This document shows, in pieces, positions 180-15,642 of a stretch of DNA of 64,000 nt. Position numbers and translations under genes: made by a program. The DNA is from Tetramitus jugosus (lineage: Eukaryota > Protista > Heterolobosea), in the NCBI GenBank assembly GCA_937625935.1, contig OW569351.1, forward strand, positions 62,001 to 126,000, read 5' to 3'. The stretch's first letter is position 1. Every line of letters begins with the position of its first letter. The notes below the pieces were generated by a model. It did no database searches and had not been told where the DNA came from. It saw nothing but the letters and a program-made list of their open reading frames with translations.

Positions 180-1733
180 ATGAAACAACCCACTTCTCCA
201 CTCCTCATCAACACTCAAAACACCCATAAGGAATTCAACCACGATTCTCTTTCTCCGCTGTACAGCAAAAACAATACTCCGACCCGACATCTTTCTCCCG
301 ACAGCCTCTACAGTGTGAGCGAATGGTCCGTTGGTCAAGTCACACACTGGCTCAAGCAATGCGGATTCTCAAAGCACGTACAGAGCACGTTCGAATCGCA
401 TCGCATCGACGGACGCGTGCTCCTCTGTCTCAACGAACATGATTTGCGACAAGCTCCCCTGCGAATGAACATTCTAGGCGACTTGAAACGCATGTCCATT
501 GCGATACAACAATTGAGACGCAAATGGAAACAACAAATACAACAACATCAGTTAGCTACAACCAACAACAACAACAACAACAACAACAATGACGATGGAA
601 GTGGTGGAAACAACATGACTTTGGACAATGAAAATGATGATGACTCTGATAGCAATGATCGTAATGATGATTACAACAGTAAGCAAACAAAAACAAACAA
701 GTCATCCAAGAGTCATCACAGTCACAGTCGCAACAGAGACTCACTACAGTCATTGTTGCTACTAGGAGAAGACAATTCCATACCAGAGACATTGGGTCTC
801 TTGTGGGAGCATTATCTTCCGTCTTTGACGATACCGAGTCCAGAGATTGAACCCTGGTCCTCCATGTTATCCAAACTCTTTGTTTCCATTTGTTTCTTTT
901 TCATTTCTATTTTTGTCACGTCGTTGACCATGGTGTTTGTTCATGAGCGTGTGCCTGATCCGTTGACTTATCCTCCGTTGCCCGACATTATACTTGATAA
1001 TGTTCCGTTGATACCGTGGGCGTTTGTTGCGAGTGAAGTGCTTGCTGCTATTTTGTTTGTCATCATGTGTGGTGTCATGTTTGTTCACAAGCATCGAGGA
1101 GTGATATTGAGGAGGATGCTTGCAGTGATTGGAACAGTGTTTTTGTTGCGTTGTGTGACCATGTTTGTGACGAGTTTGAGTGTGCCTGGTGAGCACTTGG
1201 GTAGTGGTTGTAAGGCGTTGCCTCCATTGAATACGATTGATGAAAAGTTGCAGAGAGCTTGGTTGATTGCTTCGAGATTTGGTTTGTCGATCACTGGATT
1301 GAAAACATGTGGCGATTACATGTTTTCTGGGCATTCGAGCTGTTTGACTCTGTTGAATTTGTTTATTGTGGAATATACGCCAAGAAACTATCGAGGATTG
1401 CACATCATGTCATGGACAATGAATTTGTTTGGCATGGCGTTTGTGTTGGCCGCTCACGAGCATTATAGTCTTGATGTATTTCTGGCATTCTACATTTCTA
1501 GTCGTATGTTTGGTTACTATCATCAGCATGCCAACATTCAGCACGCGTTGGATGATCTGGACAAGGATCACAAGGATTCTTGGTTCATGTACATTCCTCT
1601 CTTCTCCTTTTTGGAAGAGAATATGAATGGAAAGCTACCAAACGAGTACGAGTGGCCATGGGCACCACTGCTCGACTCATTGAGGAGAAAGTTGCGCAGG
1701 AATAATCGAGATGAAAACAACAAACAGAAGTAA
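180..1733 (+). CDS. Sphingomyelin synthase-related protein (SAM domain + SMS/PAP2-like catalytic domain; SMSr/SAMD8-like)
   Basis: N-terminal SAM (WSVGQVTHWL...IDGRVLLCL...LGDLKR), PPLPD, CGDYMFSGH and HEHYSLDV SMS motifs, about 6 TM helices. Confidence 0.92.
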   Translation: MKQPTSPLLINTQNTHKEFNHDSLSPLYSKNNTPTRHLSPDSLYSVSEWSVGQVTHWLKQCGFSKHVQSTFESHRIDGRVLLCLNEHDLRQAPLRMNILGDLKRMSIAIQQLRRKWKQQIQQHQLATTNNNNNNNNNDDGSGGNNMTLDNENDDDSDSNDRNDDYNSKQTKTNKSSKSHHSHSRNRDSLQSLLLLGEDNSIPETLGLLWEHYLPSLTIPSPEIEPWSSMLSKLFVSICFFFISIFVTSLTMVFVHERVPDPLTYPPLPDIILDNVPLIPWAFVASEVLAAILFVIMCGVMFVHKHRGVILRRMLAVIGTVFLLRCVTMFVTSLSVPGEHLGSGCKALPPLNTIDEKLQRAWLIASRFGLSITGLKTCGDYMFSGHSSCLTLLNLFIVEYTPRNYRGLHIMSWTMNLFGMAFVLAAHEHYSLDVFLAFYISSRMFGYYHQHANIQHALDDLDKDHKDSWFMYIPLFSFLEENMNGKLPNEYEWPWAPLLDSLRRKLRRNNRDENNKQK

Positions 1734-1755
1734 ATGTGATAATTTAATTGTTTGT

Positions 1756-4287
1756 TTAGTATCCTCGAACTTCGATCAATTTCTTGGCTTGGTATTCTCT
1801 GCCCATTGCCTCATATCGATCAAATTGCATGACATAATGTCCCAATCCTCTCGTCATTGATCTCAAGTGTTTTGCATAACCAATCAATTCGCTCAATGGA
1901 ACTTCAGCGTGAATCACTTGTTCGTCGTGAGATCCTCTCATGACACTAATACCCTTCACTCTGCCTCTTCTGCCACCGCTAATATCAGACATGACACTGC
2001 CCAGATATTGAACATCGACCTGAATATCCATACTCATGATTGGCTCCAACAGCGCCACCTTATTCGACTCCATGCAAGTTGCAAAGACTTCTCTTAGACA
2101 CTTCTCAGCCACAATCTTCATCGTGTTGTTGTTCTGTTGATTAAATCGCTTGTGAGAGAAATGTGGAGGCAATGAAGCACCAACAAATCGAACGTGCAAA
2201 TCTTCCATATTATATCCCAAGATTACACCTCTCATGATTGCATTGTTCACTCCTTCTCTGACACCATCCTTCAATGGGAAGATGGCATCGATCACTGGCT
2301 CACATTGACCCGCGTCCAGTCCCATTTGGAAGTAGTTGCCTCTGCCACGGTCATTTTCAGACACTTGTAGCGTAAGTTTGTACACTTCTCCCTTACTCTT
2401 CTCATACTCTGTCGTGTGTATGATTGGCCTGTCAAGAGACAGTGTTTCCTTGTATGAAATCATAACAGGACCAGTGTAGAATGGAACCTTGAAATCTTTT
2501 TCTAGTCGATCCTTGATAATCTCCAAGTGCAGCTCTCCCATACCACTAATCAAAGTCTGAGTAGTCTCAGGATCAACACTCACAACAAAACTAGGATCTT
2601 CTCTCTGCAGATCCTCTAGTGCCTTATCCAACATGTATTGCATGGCACTGCTCTCAGGTTCGATAGAACAGAAGAACACTGGCTGAGGAATGTTAATCTT
2701 TTCGAGCTCATATGGATTGAGCTTATCCTTTGATCCGAGCAATGTATCTCCTGTTCTCGTGTTTTTCATTCCCGCGATCACACCAATATTACCTGCAGAG
2801 ATACAAGGAATATCCTGGGGAATGTTGGCATGCATCTGGAAAATCTTTGTTGGTGTTTCAATGTTGCCCGTTGCAGCATTGAACAACTCAGTCTTCAGAT
2901 TGATCTCTCCAGAGTACACTCGAACAAACACAAGGGGTCCCAAGTGAGCATCGTTCAACACCTTGAATGCCAAAGCGCACAATGGACCATTGGTGTCATG
3001 AGCAATCCTGAATTTTCTAAAGTCCTCTTCCTCTTCTTCCTTTCTCTTCATGGTTGCCAGTGGTTGTTCTCTCTCTGATGGACTGGGCAAATAGTCAACT
3101 ACAGCGTCCATCAACGGCTGCACTCCCATGTTTCTCAAGGAAGTTCCACACAGGACAGCCACAGCCTTTCCACTCAGTGTAATTCTTCGAATGGCAGCCT
3201 TGATTTGATCAATGGACAACTCATCTTCACCCATCTCCAAATACAAGTCACCAAACTGTTCATCAAACTCTGCTAGCTGTTCGAGCATAAGTGATCTTGC
3301 CTCTGAGACCCCATCCATGTCTTCTGACGCCAAATGATTTGAGTCCATTGACAGTGCCACTCTGTTCACTGTTCTTCCTCTGTCATTCTGATCAAAAGTA
3401 ATGATTTCCATGGCAACCAAATCGACCACAGCTCTAAATCCATCTTCCTCACCAATGGGATACTGTATCGCGATCGGTTCAATGTCCAGCTTGTCTCTAA
3501 TGGTTTGGACAGCAGCGGAAAAATCTGCGCCAATCTTGTCCATTTTATTCATGAAGCAAATACGGGGAACACCGTATCGCTTGGCTTGTCGCCACACAGT
3601 CTTTGTTTGAGCTTCGACTCCAGTCACGGCATCAAACACGGCGACTGCACCATCCAACACACGAACACATCTCTCTACTTCAACAGTAAAGTCAACATGC
3701 CCTGGTGTGTCAATGAGATTGATCTTGTTGTCTTTCCATGGGAATGTGATGGCAGCAGACGTAATGGTAATGCCTCTGTCTTGTTCCTGGGGCATATAAT
3801 CCGTGATTGTATCACCATCGTCCACTGTTCCCAAATATTCAGAGTAACCAGAATAAAAGAGCATACGCTCAGTCGTAGTTGTCTTTCCCGCGTCAATGTG
3901 AGCTATAATTCCGACATTTCGGATTTTTTGGTCCATGGCGGGAACTTTAATCTCCGCTGTTTTTTGTTGAGTTTTTTGGCGGACTTCTTTGGCGCGAACA
4001 GAAACTCGTTGTTTGAGGTCCTTGGAAGCAGCGGAGGCATATGTTCTGAGTGCAATGACATTTCTTTGTTGTTGCTGTCTGCAGTGACGAAGATTGACCC
4101 TCACTTTTGGTGTCAATGGATGGTTGTTGTTATTGTTGTTGTTGATGTTGACGAGAGAGTGAAAATTGTTCGTGCTTTGATGGTTGTGGAGAATCATTGG
4201 ATGAGCACATGTTTGATGGGTGCAATGACGTTGTGAGTGTGCTGCCTTGTTGCGAGCATTCCTCAGCAGCGAACCAACGTTTCTCAT
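1756..4287 (-). CDS. GFM2: Mitochondrial elongation factor G2 / ribosome-releasing factor 2
   Basis: [34 protein letters not shown]. Arg-rich presequence from ATG 4287. Domain IV lacks the EF-G1 QSGG and HxxDS loops, favouring EF-G2. Confidence 0.85.
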
Positions 4288-9041: not shown

Positions 9042-9103
9042 ATTTTATAAAGCAGTCTTTTACTTTATTTATGACTACACTTTTCTTTTGGATAACAAAC
9101 AAA

Positions 9104-9721
9104 ATGAGCAAAAACAAATATCTCCTGCAAGCACCAACAAGCATCACCTGCCACCACAATCACCATATTCATCAGCCGCAATCACACAATGCCGATTCCT
9201 ATTCCCTCGAATACAGCATCCATTCTTGTCCTTTGTTGCTCAGAGATGACATGTCACAAATGTTTGAACACTTGTCTCCCAGTGAAATCAAGTCAAAGTT
9301 ACTCATCGTGCCAATCATACAAGTGTCTGATGTTCCATTGTATGATTTGAACGAGGAATCGAGAGCTGCTTTTCGATCAGATTTTGTCTCGTTTGCCCGG
9401 CAGGTGGTGAACAAGATCAAAATGAGACAATCATCAGATGACACTCCACAACAAATGTGGACAGACTTTGTTGATCCTGCATCTGGTCAACCGGTGTTTT
9501 CAAAGACATGCAAGGTGAGCAACTATGACGACGCAAATTTATTTGAGTTGGTGTTAAAGTACTCGACTGAAACGACAAGAGATTCCACTTCAATCGTCTA
9601 TCATCCTGCCCATGGTGTTAATGTGTTCCCTGGAGTCATTTTTACAACAGCACCTGTTAGTGTGCTACAGCAGGTCATTGATGAGATTGCTTCCATTCGG
9701 CCGTGCAATTGTCACTTGTAA
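9104..9721 (+). CDS. Cobalamin trafficking protein CblD/MMADHC-like
   Basis: EYSIHSCP, WTDFVDPASGQP, HPAHGVNVFPGVIFTTAP resemble the MMADHC C-terminal domain. Confidence 0.75.
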   Translation: MSKNKYLLQAPTSITCHHNHHIHQPQSHNADSYSLEYSIHSCPLLLRDDMSQMFEHLSPSEIKSKLLIVPIIQVSDVPLYDLNEESRAAFRSDFVSFARQVVNKIKMRQSSDDTPQQMWTDFVDPASGQPVFSKTCKVSNYDDANLFELVLKYSTETTRDSTSIVYHPAHGVNVFPGVIFTTAPVSVLQQVIDEIASIRPCNCHL

Positions 9722-9741
9722 ATTGTTTCAACTTGAGTTGC

Positions 9742-12621
9742 CTAAGCCAGATAGTTGATAATGGTTGAGTCCTTTTCGTCTCTTGCAATAAATTCTCGTT
9801 CAATCAAGGTTTCAATCCTTTGTTTGATCATTCGTACTTCGGGTTTGAAGTAGACCAACAATTGCTTTGCACACTCGTCCACCAAAGCTTTATAGCTCAT
9901 TGCTTTTCTTGCTTTAATAACTCTAATCAATGCCGCTTCGATTGAATATTTTCTCTCTTGGTCAACTGTTTCTTTCACTTCCTTCTTCTCCTGAGCACTT
10001 TGACTCGTGACATCTGTTGAATCGGCAATCTTAATTTTTGTTAGGTTGGATTTGAAATCTTCGTTCACCACGAATTCACTGTCAACATTGGTGGCACCAC
10101 CGTTGTTGGATGCTCTCAGCTTGACGAGCTTGCATTTGGTTGATGCTAGCTTTTTGAAAATGTCAGCAATGTGTTTGTGAGAGGAGATATTCAAGTTTGT
10201 TGCAACTTGTCGAATACTGAGTGATTCATCCTTTCTCAATTGGTTGAATAGCAGTAAAACACATGTGTGAAGCGTAGGTAGAGTCAATTCGTATTGGCCT
10301 GACCAGAATCGTGCTACAATTGTGGCATTTCCTGCTGAATGTACCCACGATAACTTTCTTCCCTTGGATGTATGCAAAGTGTAAAAACCATTGAACGTTT
10401 GAATACATTCATCCAACTCTCTGGGCCATAATTGATTCAAATTTGGTTGCAGAGCTGGCCAATATCCATGCGTCAGTATCAGTGGCTTGAATACAATACC
10501 ATTGATAGAGTTATTTGGTTTCTCTGGAGACTTCTGTTCATCATGGTGCTTGCCTTGGTGTGAGGTGAACGCTTGGACAATATTCTGATTATTTGATACA
10601 TCTCTGACCATTCCTTCCATTCTAAAGGTAAAATGAAGTCCAAAATTGGTTTTCAGTTTAGCTAACATGACTCGTTCATCATACATCGAGGTATCATCAC
10701 AACGGCTAATCAATCGATGGGCCAATTGCCTATGGTACAGCGTTTGGAGAATGTCTTTGTCTTGAACGAGTTTGAAAACAGATATGATCTTGTCAAGTTT
10801 TCTCGCATCAAGCGAACCAGATTTCAATAGTTGATCACTAAAAGACAATGCTCGTAACATAACAGAGGGCCTACTTTGATTCTCTTCCGCGTCAGAGGAC
10901 ATCATGTTTGATATTGTAGTTTTCAATAGGCCATGCAGTTCCTTTTGTCCAAAAAAGTTCTTGTCGATCATGCTTCGCATCATCTGAGCATAGTGCAAAA
11001 TATCATCGATCGTTTGTTCTTCAGCACTATTCTGAGCAATCGAAAGAGAATCGCTACTAGGTGCATTTAGCGTAAAGTTCTGGAAGATTTGATCTCCTTC
11101 AGTCGTTAGATAAATTTGCAGATATTGCTGGAATAGTTGATTCGCTGTGCTATCATGCCTAAATAGATTATAGATATCAATCTTTTCCAAGTCTGAATAG
11201 TTTTGGAAGTCGCCAAACAGTCCCGATAATATTTGTTTCATGTCAATCTCGTTCAATGGTTTAGCAATTCGAAGTAGTTTCAACAAAGCGACTGCGAAGA
11301 ATCTCTTCTTACAGCTTACTAGATACTTTGGCGAATTTCCGCCTTGATCATTTCTTACAGTCTTAATTTTGTCCTTAAATGATGCATATGAAATGGTAAA
11401 GTCAGTTGTGTTGTCATAATCTATCCCAATGTCTACTTCAGCGATCGGAAAGCTATACACAACCTTCGAAAAGAAAAATAAACGAGGGATTTCAAACCTG
11501 ACAGAACCATCAGCAATCACCATTTTCCCTTCTTTCACATCTCTTCGGTCATTTAAATTGGTACTTGTTACTTTGAAGCTCTTCTTCTCTTGCTTTGTTA
11601 GAACGCGCTTCAATTTTTCATAATATCGCACGTCCAGCACGACAATTTCCATCCAACCATTCGCATCCAAATATCGATTCACTAATTTTTCAGTATCAAA
11701 GAATATTTGCATGAGATAGGTTCCTGATTGATTAGGTACAATTGTCAATTGAATCTTTCCGTCTTGAATATCGTGAACCGTTGTGAAGTTGGGGTTATTA
11801 AGACTCATTTTCATATCGAAAAGCACCGATATTTGATTGAGATTAGATCGAGTGGCGTTCACTACATTTCCATACTGATCATGCAACTCTACCTGTAGTA
11901 AAATTGGACGAGAGGCACAGAGTACTGTATCCCTCACACTATTCAATTCTCCTGTTAGTTCACACTTGGAGGCATCAATTGAACCAGGTGCCACATTGAT
12001 TTTGAATGGACTTCCATGAACATGTTCATTCAACACTTTGACATGCACCTTGTATTGTCCACTGATTGTTGGAATGAAACTGACTTGTCGAACATTGTTC
12101 ATAGATGGTAGAGAAGAGGATTCCTGTGGAGAAGTGGCTTGAGGGACAAGATCCATCACTCCAGTGACCAATATCTGGATTGAAGAAGGATGAATCACTT
12201 GATTTTCTTCGTTGCCAAACTCCTTACCATGATCATCAGCCAAGTAGAGTGAGAAATCAATAGAGTTACCAACCGTGTAGTTCAAAGTGGTAGATAAACC
12301 TCTGATATAGCAATACTTGGGACAAAGAACAGGTTCTTTAGGAACAATCAGCTGCTGAACAGACTGAAAAACGGTTTGAGAAACCGAGGGAGAAGGTTTG
12401 GAGTCTTCTTGTTGGTTGGCAGTTCCCCAAACAGCCCCAGAAATGGAGGACCACAAGGAGCTAAAGAAACCTTTCACACATTGAGAAATACTCTGTTGAT
12501 CTTGACCACCTTGTCGTAGTCCGCCGCGGTTATTCATTTGGCGCCTATTTTGCTTTCCGGAGCACGGGGAGAGGAGAAAAAATAAAGAGGAGATACCCAG
12601 GAGGAGTATCAGAAAGCTCAT
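9742..12621 (-). CDS. Atypical cullin: N-terminal signal/TM + filamin-type Ig repeats + PH-like region + cullin homology and neddylation (WHB) domains
   Basis: MSFLILLLGISSLFFLL; filamin motif FIPTISGQYKVHVKVLNEHVHGSPF; cullin DKDILQTLYHRQLAHRLI, RMEGMVRD, LTHGYWP, GRKLSW, IEAALIRVIKARK, IKQRIETLIEREFIARD. Confidence 0.9.
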   Translation of the reverse strand: MSFLILLLGISSLFFLLSPCSGKQNRRQMNNRGGLRQGGQDQQSISQCVKGFFSSLWSSISGAVWGTANQQEDSKPSPSVSQTVFQSVQQLIVPKEPVLCPKYCYIRGLSTTLNYTVGNSIDFSLYLADDHGKEFGNEENQVIHPSSIQILVTGVMDLVPQATSPQESSSLPSMNNVRQVSFIPTISGQYKVHVKVLNEHVHGSPFKINVAPGSIDASKCELTGELNSVRDTVLCASRPILLQVELHDQYGNVVNATRSNLNQISVLFDMKMSLNNPNFTTVHDIQDGKIQLTIVPNQSGTYLMQIFFDTEKLVNRYLDANGWMEIVVLDVRYYEKLKRVLTKQEKKSFKVTSTNLNDRRDVKEGKMVIADGSVRFEIPRLFFFSKVVYSFPIAEVDIGIDYDNTTDFTISYASFKDKIKTVRNDQGGNSPKYLVSCKKRFFAVALLKLLRIAKPLNEIDMKQILSGLFGDFQNYSDLEKIDIYNLFRHDSTANQLFQQYLQIYLTTEGDQIFQNFTLNAPSSDSLSIAQNSAEEQTIDDILHYAQMMRSMIDKNFFGQKELHGLLKTTISNMMSSDAEENQSRPSVMLRALSFSDQLLKSGSLDARKLDKIISVFKLVQDKDILQTLYHRQLAHRLISRCDDTSMYDERVMLAKLKTNFGLHFTFRMEGMVRDVSNNQNIVQAFTSHQGKHHDEQKSPEKPNNSINGIVFKPLILTHGYWPALQPNLNQLWPRELDECIQTFNGFYTLHTSKGRKLSWVHSAGNATIVARFWSGQYELTLPTLHTCVLLLFNQLRKDESLSIRQVATNLNISSHKHIADIFKKLASTKCKLVKLRASNNGGATNVDSEFVVNEDFKSNLTKIKIADSTDVTSQSAQEKKEVKETVDQERKYSIEAALIRVIKARKAMSYKALVDECAKQLLVYFKPEVRMIKQRIETLIEREFIARDEKDSTIINYLA

Positions 12622-13036
12622 TGAATTTTTAGTTGAATGATAATTGCAGCGATGATTATCATGCAATTTGTTTTGTTGGTGGTCTTTCGTTAGAAAAGAA
12701 CAGATCCGTTTGCATGTTCAAATAAAGAACATGATTTTCTGCAGGAATGAGCAAAACTCCGTCAAACTACAGTCTCGTTGTAAACAAATGATGACAGAAT
12801 AGTACAAGAGGCTTCAGATTGAAAAACCAAGGAATTCAGCCATTGGCTCAATCAGGGATAAAGCTGGAATCATCCGACAAAAAGTGTTATATTTTAAGGA
12901 ATGGAGTTGACTGATCTTGGTTGTGCAGTGGAGCACAAGGAAACCACCGGGAAACTCACTCGTTCTTTCAAATTAAACGACATATGTCCCCACAAAAACC
13001 CATTCATCACCTACCCAGTTTCGTTTTAAATTGATC

Positions 13037-13831
13037 ATGCAGAAGAGATTAAGATTTCAATCGCTAAACGAGGATCCCGAGCTCCAAAAAACCGATGCAG
13101 TCAGAGACAAGCCCACAGTTATTGAAAAGGACATCCCTCTTTCAACCAAGGAAACTTTGGAGACAGCAGCCAAAGAAAAATTGTATCAACTCAAGTCTTC
13201 GGTCGAGAGACGAGTGTTGATTACTCGAATGCTATGGAAGAGTACTCTGTTTGTAACTGCTTTGCTCTATTTTTTCAACTTTCTGTTCCTGTACTTTGGA
13301 ACCATATTTGAGACGGAACTGGCTCAACCACAAAAGTTTTTCGGTTTCAAGGAAGGTCAACACAAGCATTTACAAAGAACAAATGGTGTACTGTGGTTAC
13401 TAATGTCTGCAGTCAACGTTTTTGCTTTGGCAAAGGACGAGAACAGAGGAAGTACATCTACCTTGTTGTTCAGTGCTCTGTGTAATGCAACCGTCTCTCT
13501 GCACTATGCTCTGGAGATGCTTTACTTTGGTGGAATGAGACTTGAAGTGTTGGCTATTCAATTGTTCATTGTCAGTATCAACGGTTATTGGACCATGGTT
13601 GATTACAAGCAGAGGAGAAGAGTTCATGAATTACGAGGAGAGAATCCCGATTTGGCTCTCAAAGATTATGATGAAGGATTAAGGAGCAGAATCATTAGAA
13701 AATTGGTATTGTTCAAGTGGGGAAGAGGAGCTTCACCAGAACAAAGTCAACGATCCATTCTTGAACAAGAGACAATACCATCGATAAAAGTAGAGTCTCC
13801 CATGGTAAGTCAAGCAACAACAAATGCCTAA
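13037..13831 (+). CDS. Multi-pass membrane protein, possibly Erg28-like
   Basis: About 4 TM helices; RTNGVLWLL and HYALEMLYFG resemble the Erg28 RTFGxW and HFxxExxxFG motifs. Confidence 0.5.
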   Translation: MQKRLRFQSLNEDPELQKTDAVRDKPTVIEKDIPLSTKETLETAAKEKLYQLKSSVERRVLITRMLWKSTLFVTALLYFFNFLFLYFGTIFETELAQPQKFFGFKEGQHKHLQRTNGVLWLLMSAVNVFALAKDENRGSTSTLLFSALCNATVSLHYALEMLYFGGMRLEVLAIQLFIVSINGYWTMVDYKQRRRVHELRGENPDLALKDYDEGLRSRIIRKLVLFKWGRGASPEQSQRSILEQETIPSIKVESPMVSQATTNA

Positions 13832-13924: not shown

Positions 13925-15289
13925 TCACCAAACAACAGTAATATCACACAGCTTTCCTCTTTGTTGAGCAGCGAGTAACTTTTCAGACATGGTAGAGTTA
14001 GTTTTCGTAACGCTGTACAAAAGGGTATGATAACCGTTGTGAGCACAAGCCACACGCAATTCACTGTGAAGAGGATCATAGGAAGCTCCAGGCAAACAAA
14101 CTTCAATCAGTTCACCATCTTGAGCTTGTAGTGAATAGGAGCTAAAGCCACACTTTCTTTCACCACATGCATAGATGCCTCCCTCCTTCGTTGTAAACAC
14201 AGTATAGTTTGCTCCACAACTGAAATCGAGCACCGTACCTATTGGCAGAGGAATATCACATACAATTAATTGCTTGTCAATGGTAGGAAACCCCAAACCT
14301 CCATGGTAGTTCTCTCCACAACCATAAAACTTGTTTGATTCTGTTCGAAAGACTGTAAAGTGTTTACCGCATCTTGCATCGACGAGTTTCTCGAACAGAG
14401 GGATACCATACACCAGAGCAGGACTAACAACGGATTCATTGGGTGAAATAGAGTCAAAACCACATTGACCATAATTGTCAAAACCCCAAGAGTACGCTGA
14501 TCCATCCTCTGCTATCACAACAGAATGGAATTCACCACACACGACCGTCTTGATCGCTACCACTCCCCAGAGATCAGAATGATCCACCTTGTTAGGAGTT
14601 AGACTATGTTGTTGAGGGTGTCCCTGTCCCAGGGATCCAAAACCACAATACCCTGAAGTATACACACAGTTATCAACAGTGACAAACACTGTATGATAAG
14701 CGCCAGGAGCAACCAGCTTTAACTTTTTGCCTTCAATGTTCTCCATTTTTGCAACACCATAAATGTTCTTTGGTGGAGCTACACCGCACTCACCATTGAG
14801 GTTGTATCCTGCTACATACAAGCACTCATACCCTTCACTGATGAAAAGTGAGTGAAGATTTCCACACTTGGTCTCCACAATATTACAATCGGTCAACTCT
14901 GGTATCAACGTTACTTGATTTACAGTCAAAATTGAATCAGCCATTGCGCAGCCACCACTAGAATTACGACCACAACTAAACACACGTCGATGGTTGGTCA
15001 CAAACAGTGAATGATGCTCACCGCAAGACACATTGACAATGTATTCACTGGGAGCCAATATTTCCTGGTCAGATGCAAACTCTTCCCCAATAGAACCGTA
15101 CTGTACCACTTGAGCAAACGTCTGAACAAGTTCCGATCTTATCCCGTTGTCCGTGTCATGCACCAGATACTGATCCATGTTGCCTATATGTGCATAGTAT
15201 GAGCGATTGAATCCGGTTTGGTGATGGTTGGAGTACCCAGCACCGTACACATTCAATTTCCTTTGAATCTTGTGCTCTGCTTGTGGCAT
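13925..15289 (-). CDS. RCC1-repeat beta-propeller protein
   Basis: Repeated (V/C)xCGxxH(S/T)xF...G.N..G.(C/L)G units; ATG 15289. Confidence 0.9.
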   Translation of the reverse strand: MPQAEHKIQRKLNVYGAGYSNHHQTGFNRSYYAHIGNMDQYLVHDTDNGIRSELVQTFAQVVQYGSIGEEFASDQEILAPSEYIVNVSCGEHHSLFVTNHRRVFSCGRNSSGGCAMADSILTVNQVTLIPELTDCNIVETKCGNLHSLFISEGYECLYVAGYNLNGECGVAPPKNIYGVAKMENIEGKKLKLVAPGAYHTVFVTVDNCVYTSGYCGFGSLGQGHPQQHSLTPNKVDHSDLWGVVAIKTVVCGEFHSVVIAEDGSAYSWGFDNYGQCGFDSISPNESVVSPALVYGIPLFEKLVDARCGKHFTVFRTESNKFYGCGENYHGGLGFPTIDKQLIVCDIPLPIGTVLDFSCGANYTVFTTKEGGIYACGERKCGFSSYSLQAQDGELIEVCLPGASYDPLHSELRVACAHNGYHTLLYSVTKTNSTMSEKLLAAQQRGKLCDITVVW

Positions 15290-15642
15290 GATGCTCGTTT
15301 TGTTCGTGTTGTCAAAGAACTGTGAAAAACGAAAAAAATTCACTGCAGCTACCTCTTTTCCTTGTTCACAGAAGTTTATGCTTTCTTTTCCACCCGTCAT
15401 ACCATTGCAGGAGGAACTCTTTGCTTACCCATCCAGGTATCTGAGTCAAATGATAGACTTCATTCGATACACTCCTGTGAGACATGTCGTCTCGGAACCG
15501 CAATTCAATTCGCTATTGTCCACGCCTCTTCGCTAATGAGTCTTTATAGACTTTACAAATTCACTCAATGCAGGAGTACCCATACATTACTATTTCTCGC
15601 GGCAGTATCTCCCTGTGATTCTTTTTATCCATAAATTCTGCC

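What the first reader, a model, noticed from the sequence alone, without database searches (positions are those of the whole stretch)
9742..12621. AREL1-like filamin module fused to a cullin C-terminal domain: possible self-contained, membrane-anchored cullin ligase
Seen: one uninterrupted ORF with a hydrophobic N-terminus, two filamin/Ig repeats, a PH-like segment (RLFFFSKVVYSF...LVSCKKRFFAVALL), then cullin homology domain, Rbx-binding strand (LTHGYWP) and intact neddylation motif (IRVIKARK). The N-terminal cullin repeats that bind Skp1/BTB/DDB1 adaptors appear largely replaced. Established: AREL1 has filamin + PH-like + HECT; canonical cullins need adaptors. Inference: a domain swap gave an adaptor-independent cullin-RING ligase using an AREL1-type targeting module. 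I do not know this architecture from described cullins. The AREL1 resemblance is from recalled motifs.
Basis: partly seen in the sequence, partly recalled or inferred. Interest (0 to 1): 0.8.

Follow-up and report, generated by a model that had tools for sequence, protein, structure and literature searches.

The report
Membrane-anchored filamin–PH–cullin fusion protein
A soil protist has an intron-less, transcribed gene for an unusual cullin: the front two-thirds of the usual adaptor-binding stalk is replaced by a hydrophobic anchor, two filamin-type Ig domains and a PH-like domain, while the ubiquitin-ligase core is kept. Only three such genes were found, so it is a rare and so far undescribed way to build a cullin ligase.

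Summary
Window 9742-12621 (minus strand) is one 959-aa ORF.

Domain order, N to C:
- a hydrophobic N-terminus
- a basic, disordered linker
- two filamin Ig repeats (Pfam 4e-14)
- a basic PH-like domain, seen by fold only (VIA Z 12.3, from a moderate-confidence AlphaFold model)
- a cullin from repeat 3 onward (Pfam Cullin positions 259-620, 1.6e-59)
- a Cullin_Nedd8 domain with the acceptor lysine (K903)

Cullin repeats 1 and 2, which bind adaptors in canonical cullins, are absent.

Two other assemblies encode the same architecture, at 52% and 35% identity. Both also start with a hydrophobic segment at their first ATG. Soil metatranscriptome contigs cross the junction collinearly, with no introns.

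No further members turned up in the word searches, in one exhaustive HMM search (only the top 150 hits visible), or in the metagenome and viral contig scans. I found no paper describing a filamin-plus-cullin protein.

The AREL1 link is an analogy, not homology. There is no HECT domain, this genome shows no filamin+HECT gene, and outside the three-member family only generic filamin repeats match the N-terminal module.

Adaptor independence and membrane topology are still inferences.

Verdict: a real, rare, new variant of the cullin family. It is most likely a membrane-tethered cullin-RING scaffold with its own targeting module. The scan's only other note on this stretch is this same finding.

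The parts
9742..12621 (-). Whole coding sequence, 959 codons plus stop (9742-9744), no intron
   Evidence: ORF list. Collinear metatranscriptome contigs with no joints. Translation check.
12559..12621 (-). Hydrophobic N-terminal segment (residues 1-21): putative signal anchor, or signal peptide
   Evidence: Kyte-Doolittle 2.17 over residues 2-20, the only such segment. Both homologs also start with a hydrophobic stretch at their first in-frame ATG.
12334..12558 (-). Basic, low-complexity linker (KQNRRQMNNRGGLRQ) followed by a conserved amphipathic motif (VKGFFSSLWSSISGAVWG); residues 22-96
   Evidence: Alignment with L001 and L019. Low pLDDT apart from a predicted helix at 44-65.
11986..12333 (-). 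Filamin-type Ig repeat 1 (residues 97-212)
   Evidence: Pfam Filamin, best stretch 100-207. Filamin-A chains in PDB at 1.8e-9. Own-genome scan 38.1 bits.
11635..11985 (-). Filamin-type Ig repeat 2 (residues 213-329), more divergent
   Evidence: Second Pfam Filamin stretch. Own-genome scan C8:73686-73979, 25.2 bits, just under the cut-off. Filamin proteins match across the repeat 1/2 boundary.
11257..11589 (-). PH-like domain (residues 345-455), strongly basic
   Evidence: AlphaFold model m8ada4222a9ed. VIA-align Z up to 12.3 with all top 50 PH-superfold. Foldseek puts PH domains first. Net charge +8 to +10 in all three members. No Pfam match.
10012..11256 (-). Cullin repeat 3, four-helix bundle, alpha/beta and WH-A subdomains (residues 456-870)
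   Evidence: Pfam Cullin 474-856, profile 259-620. PDB CUL4B 2e-44. Model pLDDT 75-90 and Foldseek matches to cullins over 508-550 columns.
10456..10476 (-). LTHGYWP motif of the cullin alpha/beta subdomain (residues 716-722)
   Evidence: Translation. T717, W721 and P722 are invariant in the 10-sequence alignment.
9745..9957 (-). Cullin_Nedd8 / WH-B domain (residues 889-959)
   Evidence: Pfam Cullin_Nedd8 4.2e-21. PDB WH-B chains.
9913..9915 (-). K903, the lysine aligned with the NEDD8 acceptor of canonical cullins (IRVIK*ARK against VRIMK*xRK)
   Evidence: Alignments and translation. That this position is the acceptor is my own knowledge of CUL1 K720.

Best explanation
This is a real, expressed, single-exon gene for an atypical cullin.

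The C-terminal 500 residues are a complete cullin catalytic platform: cullin repeat 3, four-helix bundle, alpha/beta subdomain, WH-A, and WH-B with the acceptor lysine. I infer that this platform binds the genome's Rbx1 and is activated by neddylation like any cullin.

The adaptor-binding repeats 1 and 2 have been replaced by two filamin-type Ig domains and a basic PH-like domain. These hang on a flexible basic linker behind an N-terminal hydrophobic segment.

Most likely (inferred) the hydrophobic segment acts as an N-out/C-in signal anchor. This is the arrangement of microsomal P450 anchors: hydrophobic stretch, then basic residues, then a Gly- or Pro-rich hinge. The whole ligase would then sit on the cytosolic face of a membrane, with the basic PH-like domain adding contact to acidic lipids. 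The Ig-PH module would take over the role of the missing stalk, either by binding substrates directly (for example cytoplasmic tails, as filamin Ig repeats do by strand addition) or by docking a non-canonical receptor.

Shown: architecture, conservation, transcription, and loss of repeats 1 and 2.
Inferred: Rbx1 binding, neddylation, topology and the targeting role.
For: Architecture:
- Pfam and PDB matches.
- Full-length model with a confident cullin part that matches solved cullins over 508-550 columns.
- PH-like fold.

Conservation:
- The same architecture occurs in two independent assemblies: P0001/L001 at 52% identity and P0039/L019 at 35%.
- All three start with a hydrophobic stretch at the first in-frame ATG.
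- Two of the three have a basic cluster right after it, followed by a G/Q-rich or PPPP stretch.
- Residues invariant in the organism's canonical cullins, including LTxGxWP and the R..K.RK neddylation motif, are kept in all three.
- In a tree of the C-terminal halves the three form one clade (100/100) next to a canonical paralog of the same genome.

Expression and selection:
- Contigs from soil metatranscriptomes of separate studies cover 9401-11777 and 10148-12514 collinearly, with no joints and no coverage of the upstream intergenic region.
- An oligo-dT library holds identical pieces of the 3' half.
- Differences from the soil variant fall in 22 synonymous against 15 non-synonymous codons. 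The one indel is in frame, in a variable loop.

Partner: an Rbx1 gene is present in the genome (87.8 bits).
Against: - No experiment or complex model shows Rbx1 binding or neddylation.
- Topology is not established. The N-terminus could be a cleaved signal peptide (small residues at -1 and -3 in two members), and the third member lacks the basic cluster.
- RNA contigs stop at 12514, short of the ATG at 12621. A conserved in-frame Met (residue 29, inside the RRQMN motif) could be an alternative start giving a soluble protein.
- The RNA libraries may contain some DNA.
- The PH-like fold rests on a 3-sequence alignment. Only one of five models reached pLDDT 63, and no sequence profile supports it.
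- The Ig domains were modelled poorly (pLDDT about 40-64).
- Nothing shows what the Ig-PH module binds.
Confidence: 0.55

Rival explanations
1. Same protein, but not adaptor-independent. The Ig-PH module would be a docking or dimerisation platform that recruits a separate, unknown substrate receptor, as repeat 1 does in ordinary cullins and as the non-cullin parts of CUL7 and CUL9 do.
For: Every characterised cullin works with separate receptors (Marin 2009, PMC2785787). Filamin Ig repeats are known protein-docking and dimerisation modules (my knowledge). The module is well conserved between the two closer members, for example HVKVLNEHVHGSPFKI and MQIFFDTE, which fits a fixed partner.
Against: No partner is known. 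No co-conserved neighbouring gene was seen: the neighbourhoods of L001 and L019 differ from the window's.
Confidence: 0.25
2. The N-terminus is a cleaved signal peptide and the protein is lumenal or secreted. The Ig repeats would then be extracellular-type domains and the cullin part would have a role other than ubiquitin ligation.
For: A hydrophobic stretch right at the N-terminus with no preceding positive charge and small residues at -3/-1 (CSG|K, SGG|W) looks like a signal peptide. Filamin/GEX2-type Ig repeats also occur in surface proteins (Pfam Ig_GEX2_N match).
Against: No ubiquitin or NEDD8 machinery is known in the secretory lumen (my knowledge). Even so, the acceptor lysine motif and the residues shared by all cytosolic cullins are conserved in all three members down to 35% identity. 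The basic cluster after the hydrophobic segment favours a cytosolic C-terminus by the positive-inside rule.
Confidence: 0.07
3. A non-catalytic regulator. A stalk-less cullin at a membrane would sequester Rbx1, NEDD8, DCN1 or CAND1 and damp other cullin ligases instead of ubiquitinating substrates of its own.
For: It lacks the canonical receptor-binding repeats but keeps the Rbx1 and NEDD8 side. The cullin part sits on a long branch (stem 1.33).
Against: The large N-terminal Ig-PH module is conserved in three species, which would not be needed for a simple sink. Purifying selection acts along the whole gene.
Confidence: 0.08
4. Artefact: a mis-assembly or a read-through ORF joining a filamin-repeat gene to a truncated cullin gene.
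For: None beyond the oddity of the architecture.
Against: The same order of parts occurs in three independent assemblies, plus a fourth contig of the same species at 99% identity. RNA contigs from separate studies cross the junction. Conservation is continuous across the junction.
Confidence: 0.02

Closest known systems
Canonical cullins (CUL1/CUL3/CUL4 type). The nearest is a full-length paralog of the same genome at G000:C5:78990-80891.
   Same: Cullin repeat 3, four-helix bundle, alpha/beta, WH-A and WH-B domains. LTxGxWP motif. Acceptor-lysine motif. About 30-35% identity over the C-terminal 350-490 residues. Structural match over 508-550 columns.
   Different: Lacks cullin repeats 1 and 2, so it has none of the known Skp1, BTB, Elongin C or DDB1 binding surfaces. 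In their place it carries a hydrophobic N-terminus, two filamin Ig repeats and a PH-like domain. It sits on a long branch in the tree.
CUL7 and CUL9/PARC (vertebrate cullins that arose by gene fusion)
   Same: They are the precedent for a cullin C-terminal platform fused to unrelated N-terminal modules (Marin 2009, PMC2785787).
   Different: Pfam finds no DOC/APC10, CPH, ARM-like or RBR domain here. The fused modules (filamin Ig, PH-like) are different, the size is different (959 aa) and the lineage is a soil protist. This looks like an independent fusion.
AREL1 (KIAA0317), a HECT E3 with a filamin repeat
   Same: The same logic: a filamin-type Ig module placed ahead of an E3 catalytic platform (AREL1 is listed as Filamin + HECT in PMC6457168).
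   Different: The catalytic part is a cullin, not HECT. No sequence evidence ties the N-terminal module to AREL1 rather than to filamin repeats in general. This genome has no Filamin+HECT gene. The resemblance is an analogy.
Filamin / ABP280 rod repeats
   Same: Two repeats match the Pfam Filamin profile and solved filamin-A and filamin-B repeats.
   Different: Only two repeats. There is no actin-binding CH domain. They are followed by a PH-like domain and a cullin.
APC2 (cullin-related subunit of the anaphase-promoting complex)
   Same: A cullin-homology C-terminal domain that binds a RING subunit.
   Different: APC2 lacks a neddylation site and has its own ANAPC2 C-terminal domain (my knowledge). 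This protein has a Cullin_Nedd8 domain with the acceptor lysine and no ANAPC2 match.

Membership tests
Cullin family (Pfam PF00888 + PF10557) | Cullin homology region (four-helix bundle, alpha/beta, WH-A) | tested here: met
   Pfam Cullin 202.7 bits against a cut-off of 33.2, profile 259-620. PDB cullins down to 2e-44. Foldseek matches at 1e-24.
Cullin family (Pfam PF00888 + PF10557) | WH-B / Cullin_Nedd8 domain with the conserved acceptor lysine | tested here: met
   PF10557 75.2 bits against a cut-off of 36.9. K903 aligns with the lysine of the VRIMKxRK motif in six of the genome's seven canonical cullins (the seventh, L008, lacks it) and in CUL4B.
Cullin family (Pfam PF00888 + PF10557) | Three N-terminal cullin repeats, with repeat 1 binding the adaptor | tested here: not met
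   Profile positions 1-258 have no counterpart. Residues 97-455 are Ig, Ig and a PH-like domain. Only repeat 3 is retained.
Cullin family (Pfam PF00888 + PF10557) | Binds Rbx1/Rbx2 and is neddylated | not testable with these tools
   Only indirect support: the alpha/beta subdomain motif LTxGxWP is conserved and the genome has an Rbx1 gene. No complex prediction was available.
Filamin/ABP280 repeat (PF00630) | Match to the repeat profile above the curated threshold | tested here: met
   53.7 bits against a cut-off of 26.9, in two stretches. Repeat 2 alone scores 25.2 bits, just under the cut-off.
PH-like superfold | Seven-stranded bent sandwich capped by a C-terminal helix | tested here: met
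   The model has seven strands plus a helix. VIA-align Z 12.3, rmsd 2.5 A over 96 residues, and all top 50 matches are PH/PTB/FERM-F3. Caveat: mean pLDDT is 63, the alignment has 3 sequences, and only 1 of 5 models was this good.
PH domain (Pfam PF00169 and related sequence families) | Sequence-profile match | tested here: not met
   No PH-type Pfam family at E<=10 for the segment in any of the three members.
AREL1-type HECT ligases | C-terminal HECT domain | tested here: not met
   No HECT match in the protein.
AREL1-type HECT ligases | N-terminal module specifically related to that of AREL1 | tested here: inconclusive
   The profile search found only generic filamins outside the family, and the genome has no Filamin+HECT gene. 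No AREL1 N-terminal sequence could be obtained for a direct comparison.
CUL7/CUL9 | DOC (APC10) and CPH domains ahead of the cullin domain | tested here: not met
   Pfam lists none at E<=1.

The most novel reading that the evidence does not exclude
A self-contained, membrane-tethered cullin-RING ligase. A single polypeptide would be anchored in a membrane by its N-terminus and pressed to acidic lipids by a basic PH-like domain. It would recognise cytoplasmic tails of membrane proteins directly through its filamin Ig repeats and ubiquitinate them through Rbx1, with no Skp1, BTB or DDB1-type adaptor. This would be a fourth way of wiring a cullin, arisen independently in a small group of soil protists.
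Probability: 0.2. Interest if true: 0.8.

Novelty: new variant of a known kind. Interest (0 to 1): 0.55.

Why it matters
Cullin-RING ligases are defined by a modular plan. A long stalk of three cullin repeats holds an exchangeable adaptor and receptor at one end and Rbx1 at the other. Natural exceptions are few (CUL7, CUL9, APC2), and they have been informative about how geometry and regulation by neddylation, CAND1 exchange and CSN depend on the stalk.

A cullin that keeps only repeat 3 and carries its own Ig-PH module and membrane anchor is a natural experiment. It asks whether the catalytic platform can work with a short, built-in and membrane-fixed targeting arm, and whether CAND1-type exchange is dispensable in that case.

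It also offers a compact single-chain scaffold that could be studied or engineered.

Its limits are that it is known from only three uncultured or obscure protist sequences and that nothing about its activity has been tested.

Tried and rejected
1. Word-index searches gave only P0001 or the query itself, plus ordinary cullins at about 30-35% identity. They used the whole protein, then P0039, then the cullin half. These blanks are therefore weak.

2. The exhaustive HMM search with the N-module profile returned 989 hits, dominated by multi-repeat filamins. Only the best 150 are visible, so family members scoring worse than about 1e-15 could be hidden.

3. The ESM Atlas feature search gave no usable hit. 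The Atlas shape search returned PH-containing proteins only and no PH-cullin cluster.

4. The metagenome contig scan found only a 99%-identical contig of the same species. The viral contig scan found nothing.

5. Pfam on ten mid-length filamin hits, looking for a Filamin+HECT (AREL1-like) protein to compare with, found none.

6. The full-length AlphaFold run failed on the N-terminal half (pLDDT below 50 for 245-443). The PH-like call rests on the second, shorter run.

7. I looked for a paper naming the assembly that holds P0001 and found none. The organism could not be identified with the tools.

8. Mis-assembly or a chimeric ORF was rejected.

9. The 1329-aa ORF on contig C25, flagged elsewhere in the scan as an F-box-cullin fusion, has only a 50-residue Cullin match and a sub-threshold F-box match. 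I did not use it as support.
Full report
**What is there**

On the minus strand an ORF runs from 12666 to 9742. Its first ATG is at 12621, giving a 959-aa product. The neighbouring genes are also long uninterrupted ORFs: ribosomal protein L4, an MMADHC-like protein and an RCC1-repeat protein. The assembly is 26.35 Mb in 56 contigs. This looks like an intron-poor eukaryotic microbe.

Pfam finds four things in the protein:
- Filamin: 4e-14, two stretches.
- Ig_GEX2_N.
- Cullin: 1.6e-59, but only profile positions 259-620 of 620, at residues 474-856.
- Cullin_Nedd8: 4.2e-21, residues 889-951.

Solved cullins match residues 526-959 (CUL4B 2e-44, then CUL2, CUL3, CUL1, CUL5). Filamin-A repeats match residues 147-213.

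**Domain map**

A full-length AlphaFold run used the three family members plus the C-terminal parts of the genome's seven cullins as its alignment. It modelled residues 440-959 well (pLDDT 75-90) and the N-terminal half poorly. Foldseek aligns the model to solved cullins over 508-550 columns at E about 1e-24. That corresponds to cullin repeat 3 plus the whole C-terminal domain.

A second run covered residues 325-560. Mean pLDDT was 63, with 70-84 in the core, and only one of five models was this good. It gives seven strands capped by a helix at residues 347-449, followed by the helices of repeat 3.

An exhaustive structural comparison puts PH, PTB and FERM-F3 domains in all top 50 places. Z is 10.3-12.3 and rmsd is 2-3 A over 85-98 residues. 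Foldseek and the ESM Atlas shape search agree. No Pfam family matches this segment even at E<=10. The call is therefore "PH-like fold", at moderate confidence, not membership of a PH sequence family. The domain is strongly basic, with net charge +8 to +10 in all three members.

The layout, with coordinates checked by translation:

| Residues | Part |
|---|---|
| 1-21 | Hydrophobic segment |
| 22-96 | Basic linker and amphipathic motif |
| 97-212 | Filamin Ig repeat 1 |
| 213-329 | Filamin Ig repeat 2 |
| 330-344 | Short helix |
| 345-455 | PH-like domain |
| 456-870 | Cullin repeat 3, four-helix bundle, alpha/beta, WH-A |
| 889-959 | WH-B, with K903 in LIRVIKARK |

Cullin repeats 1 and 2 are absent.

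**Is it one gene, and is it expressed?**

Three lines say yes.

First, the same order of parts is found elsewhere. P0001 (948 aa as called; NCBI assembly GCA_037189345.1; 52% identity) and P0039 (924 aa; a JGI metagenome; 35% identity) both have it. Conservation is continuous across the Ig, PH-like and cullin junctions. A further metagenome contig holds the same species' gene at 99% identity.

Second, contigs from soil metatranscriptomes of separate studies lie collinearly on 9401-11777 and 10148-12514, at about 98% identity. There is no joint, so no intron and no break at the junction. An oligo-dT library holds identical pieces of the 3' half. None of the four runs covers the upstream intergenic stretch 12546-13000.

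Third, the differences from the soil variant fall in 22 synonymous against 15 non-synonymous codons. The one indel is 12 nt, in frame, in a loop that also varies between homologs.

Caveats: these are assembled contigs from RNA libraries that may contain some DNA, and coverage stops at 12514, before the start codon.

**The N-terminus**

The gene callers had cut both homologs short. In L001 the frame is open upstream and the first ATG gives MLHLLVISVLPYAVYFL, then HQKITSDRRQMN, then PPPP. In L019 the first ATG, preceded by an in-frame stop, gives MFDWILLIFIASMLSGGWTFL.

All three members therefore begin with a 15-20 residue hydrophobic stretch. Two of them follow it with a basic cluster containing the shared RRQMN motif and then a Gly/Gln- or Pro-rich hinge. 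All share an amphipathic W/F/S-rich motif before the first Ig repeat. In the query this is the only segment with mean hydropathy above 1.6.

The layout resembles an N-out/C-in signal anchor of the microsomal P450 type (my knowledge). By the positive-inside rule it would leave the ligase in the cytosol. A cleaved signal peptide cannot be excluded from sequence alone. The conserved Met29 could also serve as an alternative start. No topology predictor was available.

**Is the cullin part likely functional?**

I aligned the three family members with the seven canonical cullins of the same genome. Twenty-one columns are invariant, including T717, W721 and P722 of the LTxGxWP motif, plus R890 and R900. 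K903, R905 and K906 are nearly invariant; the only exception is a paralog that lacks the whole WH-B end.

The genome encodes an Rbx1 (87.8 bits).

In a maximum-likelihood tree of the C-terminal halves, the three fusion proteins form a 100/100 clade on a long stem (1.33). The clade is sister (95/93) to one full-length paralog, L003. L003 carries Cullin positions 1-620 plus Cullin_Nedd8. It is not clearly CUL1, CUL3 or CUL4 by its PDB matches. Other paralogs are a clear CUL4 and CUL3-like genes. The long branch makes the exact placement uncertain.

The simplest history is that a canonical cullin was duplicated and the 5' part of one copy was replaced.

**How it probably works**

This section is inference. 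The C-terminal platform binds Rbx1 and is switched on by NEDD8 at K903. The anchor and the basic PH-like domain hold it on the cytosolic face of a membrane. The two Ig repeats and the PH-like domain replace the missing stalk as the targeting arm.

Filamin Ig repeats are known to bind cytoplasmic tails of membrane proteins by strand addition, and to dimerise (my knowledge). Direct capture of membrane-protein tails is therefore an attractive but untested reading. An equally reasonable variant is that the module docks a separate, unknown receptor.

I put the general model at about 0.55 and strict adaptor independence at about 0.2. The rivals are a lumenal or secreted protein, a non-catalytic sink for Rbx1 or NEDD8, and an artefact. 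Their evidence is listed in their own section; the artefact is excluded.

**Comparison with known systems**

Marin's survey of 490 cullins singled out as structural exceptions some Plasmodium proteins without the Nedd8 domain, and CUL7 and PARC, which arose by gene fusion (PMC2785787).

The present protein is a second, independent kind of fusion. It has no DOC, CPH or RBR domains.

AREL1 is listed as Filamin + HECT (PMC6457168). That shares the idea of "filamin Ig ahead of an E3 platform", but nothing here shows common descent:
- This protein has no HECT domain.
- This genome has no Filamin+HECT gene.
- The profile of the N-terminal module hits only generic filamin repeats outside the family.

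I could not obtain an AREL1 N-terminal sequence through the tools, so no direct comparison was made.

**Distribution and novelty**

Three members are known. Nothing more came from:
- three word searches;
- the exhaustive HMM search, where only P0001 and P0039 cover the whole module among the 150 visible hits;
- the Atlas searches;
- one metagenome scan and one viral scan.

Full-text searches found no paper pairing a cullin homology domain with a filamin repeat in one protein.

Limits on this negative result:
- The HMM list is swamped by filamins.
- The library holds one representative per 50% identity cluster.
- No InterPro architecture query was possible.

I rate it a new variant of a known kind: rare, real, and of moderate to good interest for people who work on cullin-RING ligases.

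**Housekeeping**

The single read-laying run used 3601 letters. No spliced model was needed because the gene has no intron.

Noticed in passing
L008 = G000:C5:98739-103487, ORF 1420-3402 (+): A cullin paralog of the same genome (661 aa) matches the full Pfam Cullin profile 1-620. It has no Cullin_Nedd8 domain and ends ...IVRYVHNNSIILS, so it has no acceptor lysine: a cullin that cannot be neddylated.
   Followed up: partly
L021:843-4829 (+) = G000:C25, about 188342-192328: A 1329-aa ORF with only a 50-residue Cullin match (profile 523-572, 35 bits) and a sub-threshold F-box-like match at its N-terminus. Another first-stage note calls it an F-box-cullin fusion. The evidence seen here is thin.
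   Followed up: partly
window 9071-9721 (+): An MMADHC-like protein (Pfam 1.4e-16) converges on the cullin gene with only 20 bp between the two stop codons. RNA contigs run across both genes, which suggests overlapping 3' ends.
   Followed up: no
window 10520 (about residue 700 of the protein): Soil populations about 98% identical to the window carry an in-frame 12-nt deletion in the variable loop ahead of the LTxGxWP motif. It was seen in contigs of two studies.
   Followed up: no
window 13925-15400 (-) and 13031-13831 (+): An RCC1-like repeat protein (WD40_RLD 1e-52) and a multi-pass membrane protein with a borderline Erg28 match (1.4e-4) lie upstream of the cullin gene.
   Followed up: no
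L004 and L005 (G000:C36:29454-34025, G000:C17:225489-230114): The two CUL3-like genes match the Cullin profile in two pieces separated by stops. They seem to have an intron near the 5' end, unlike most genes seen in this window.
   Followed up: no
L001:1754-1987 and L019:3487-3522: Public gene calls for both homologs start at an internal ATG and miss the conserved hydrophobic N-terminus.
   Followed up: yes
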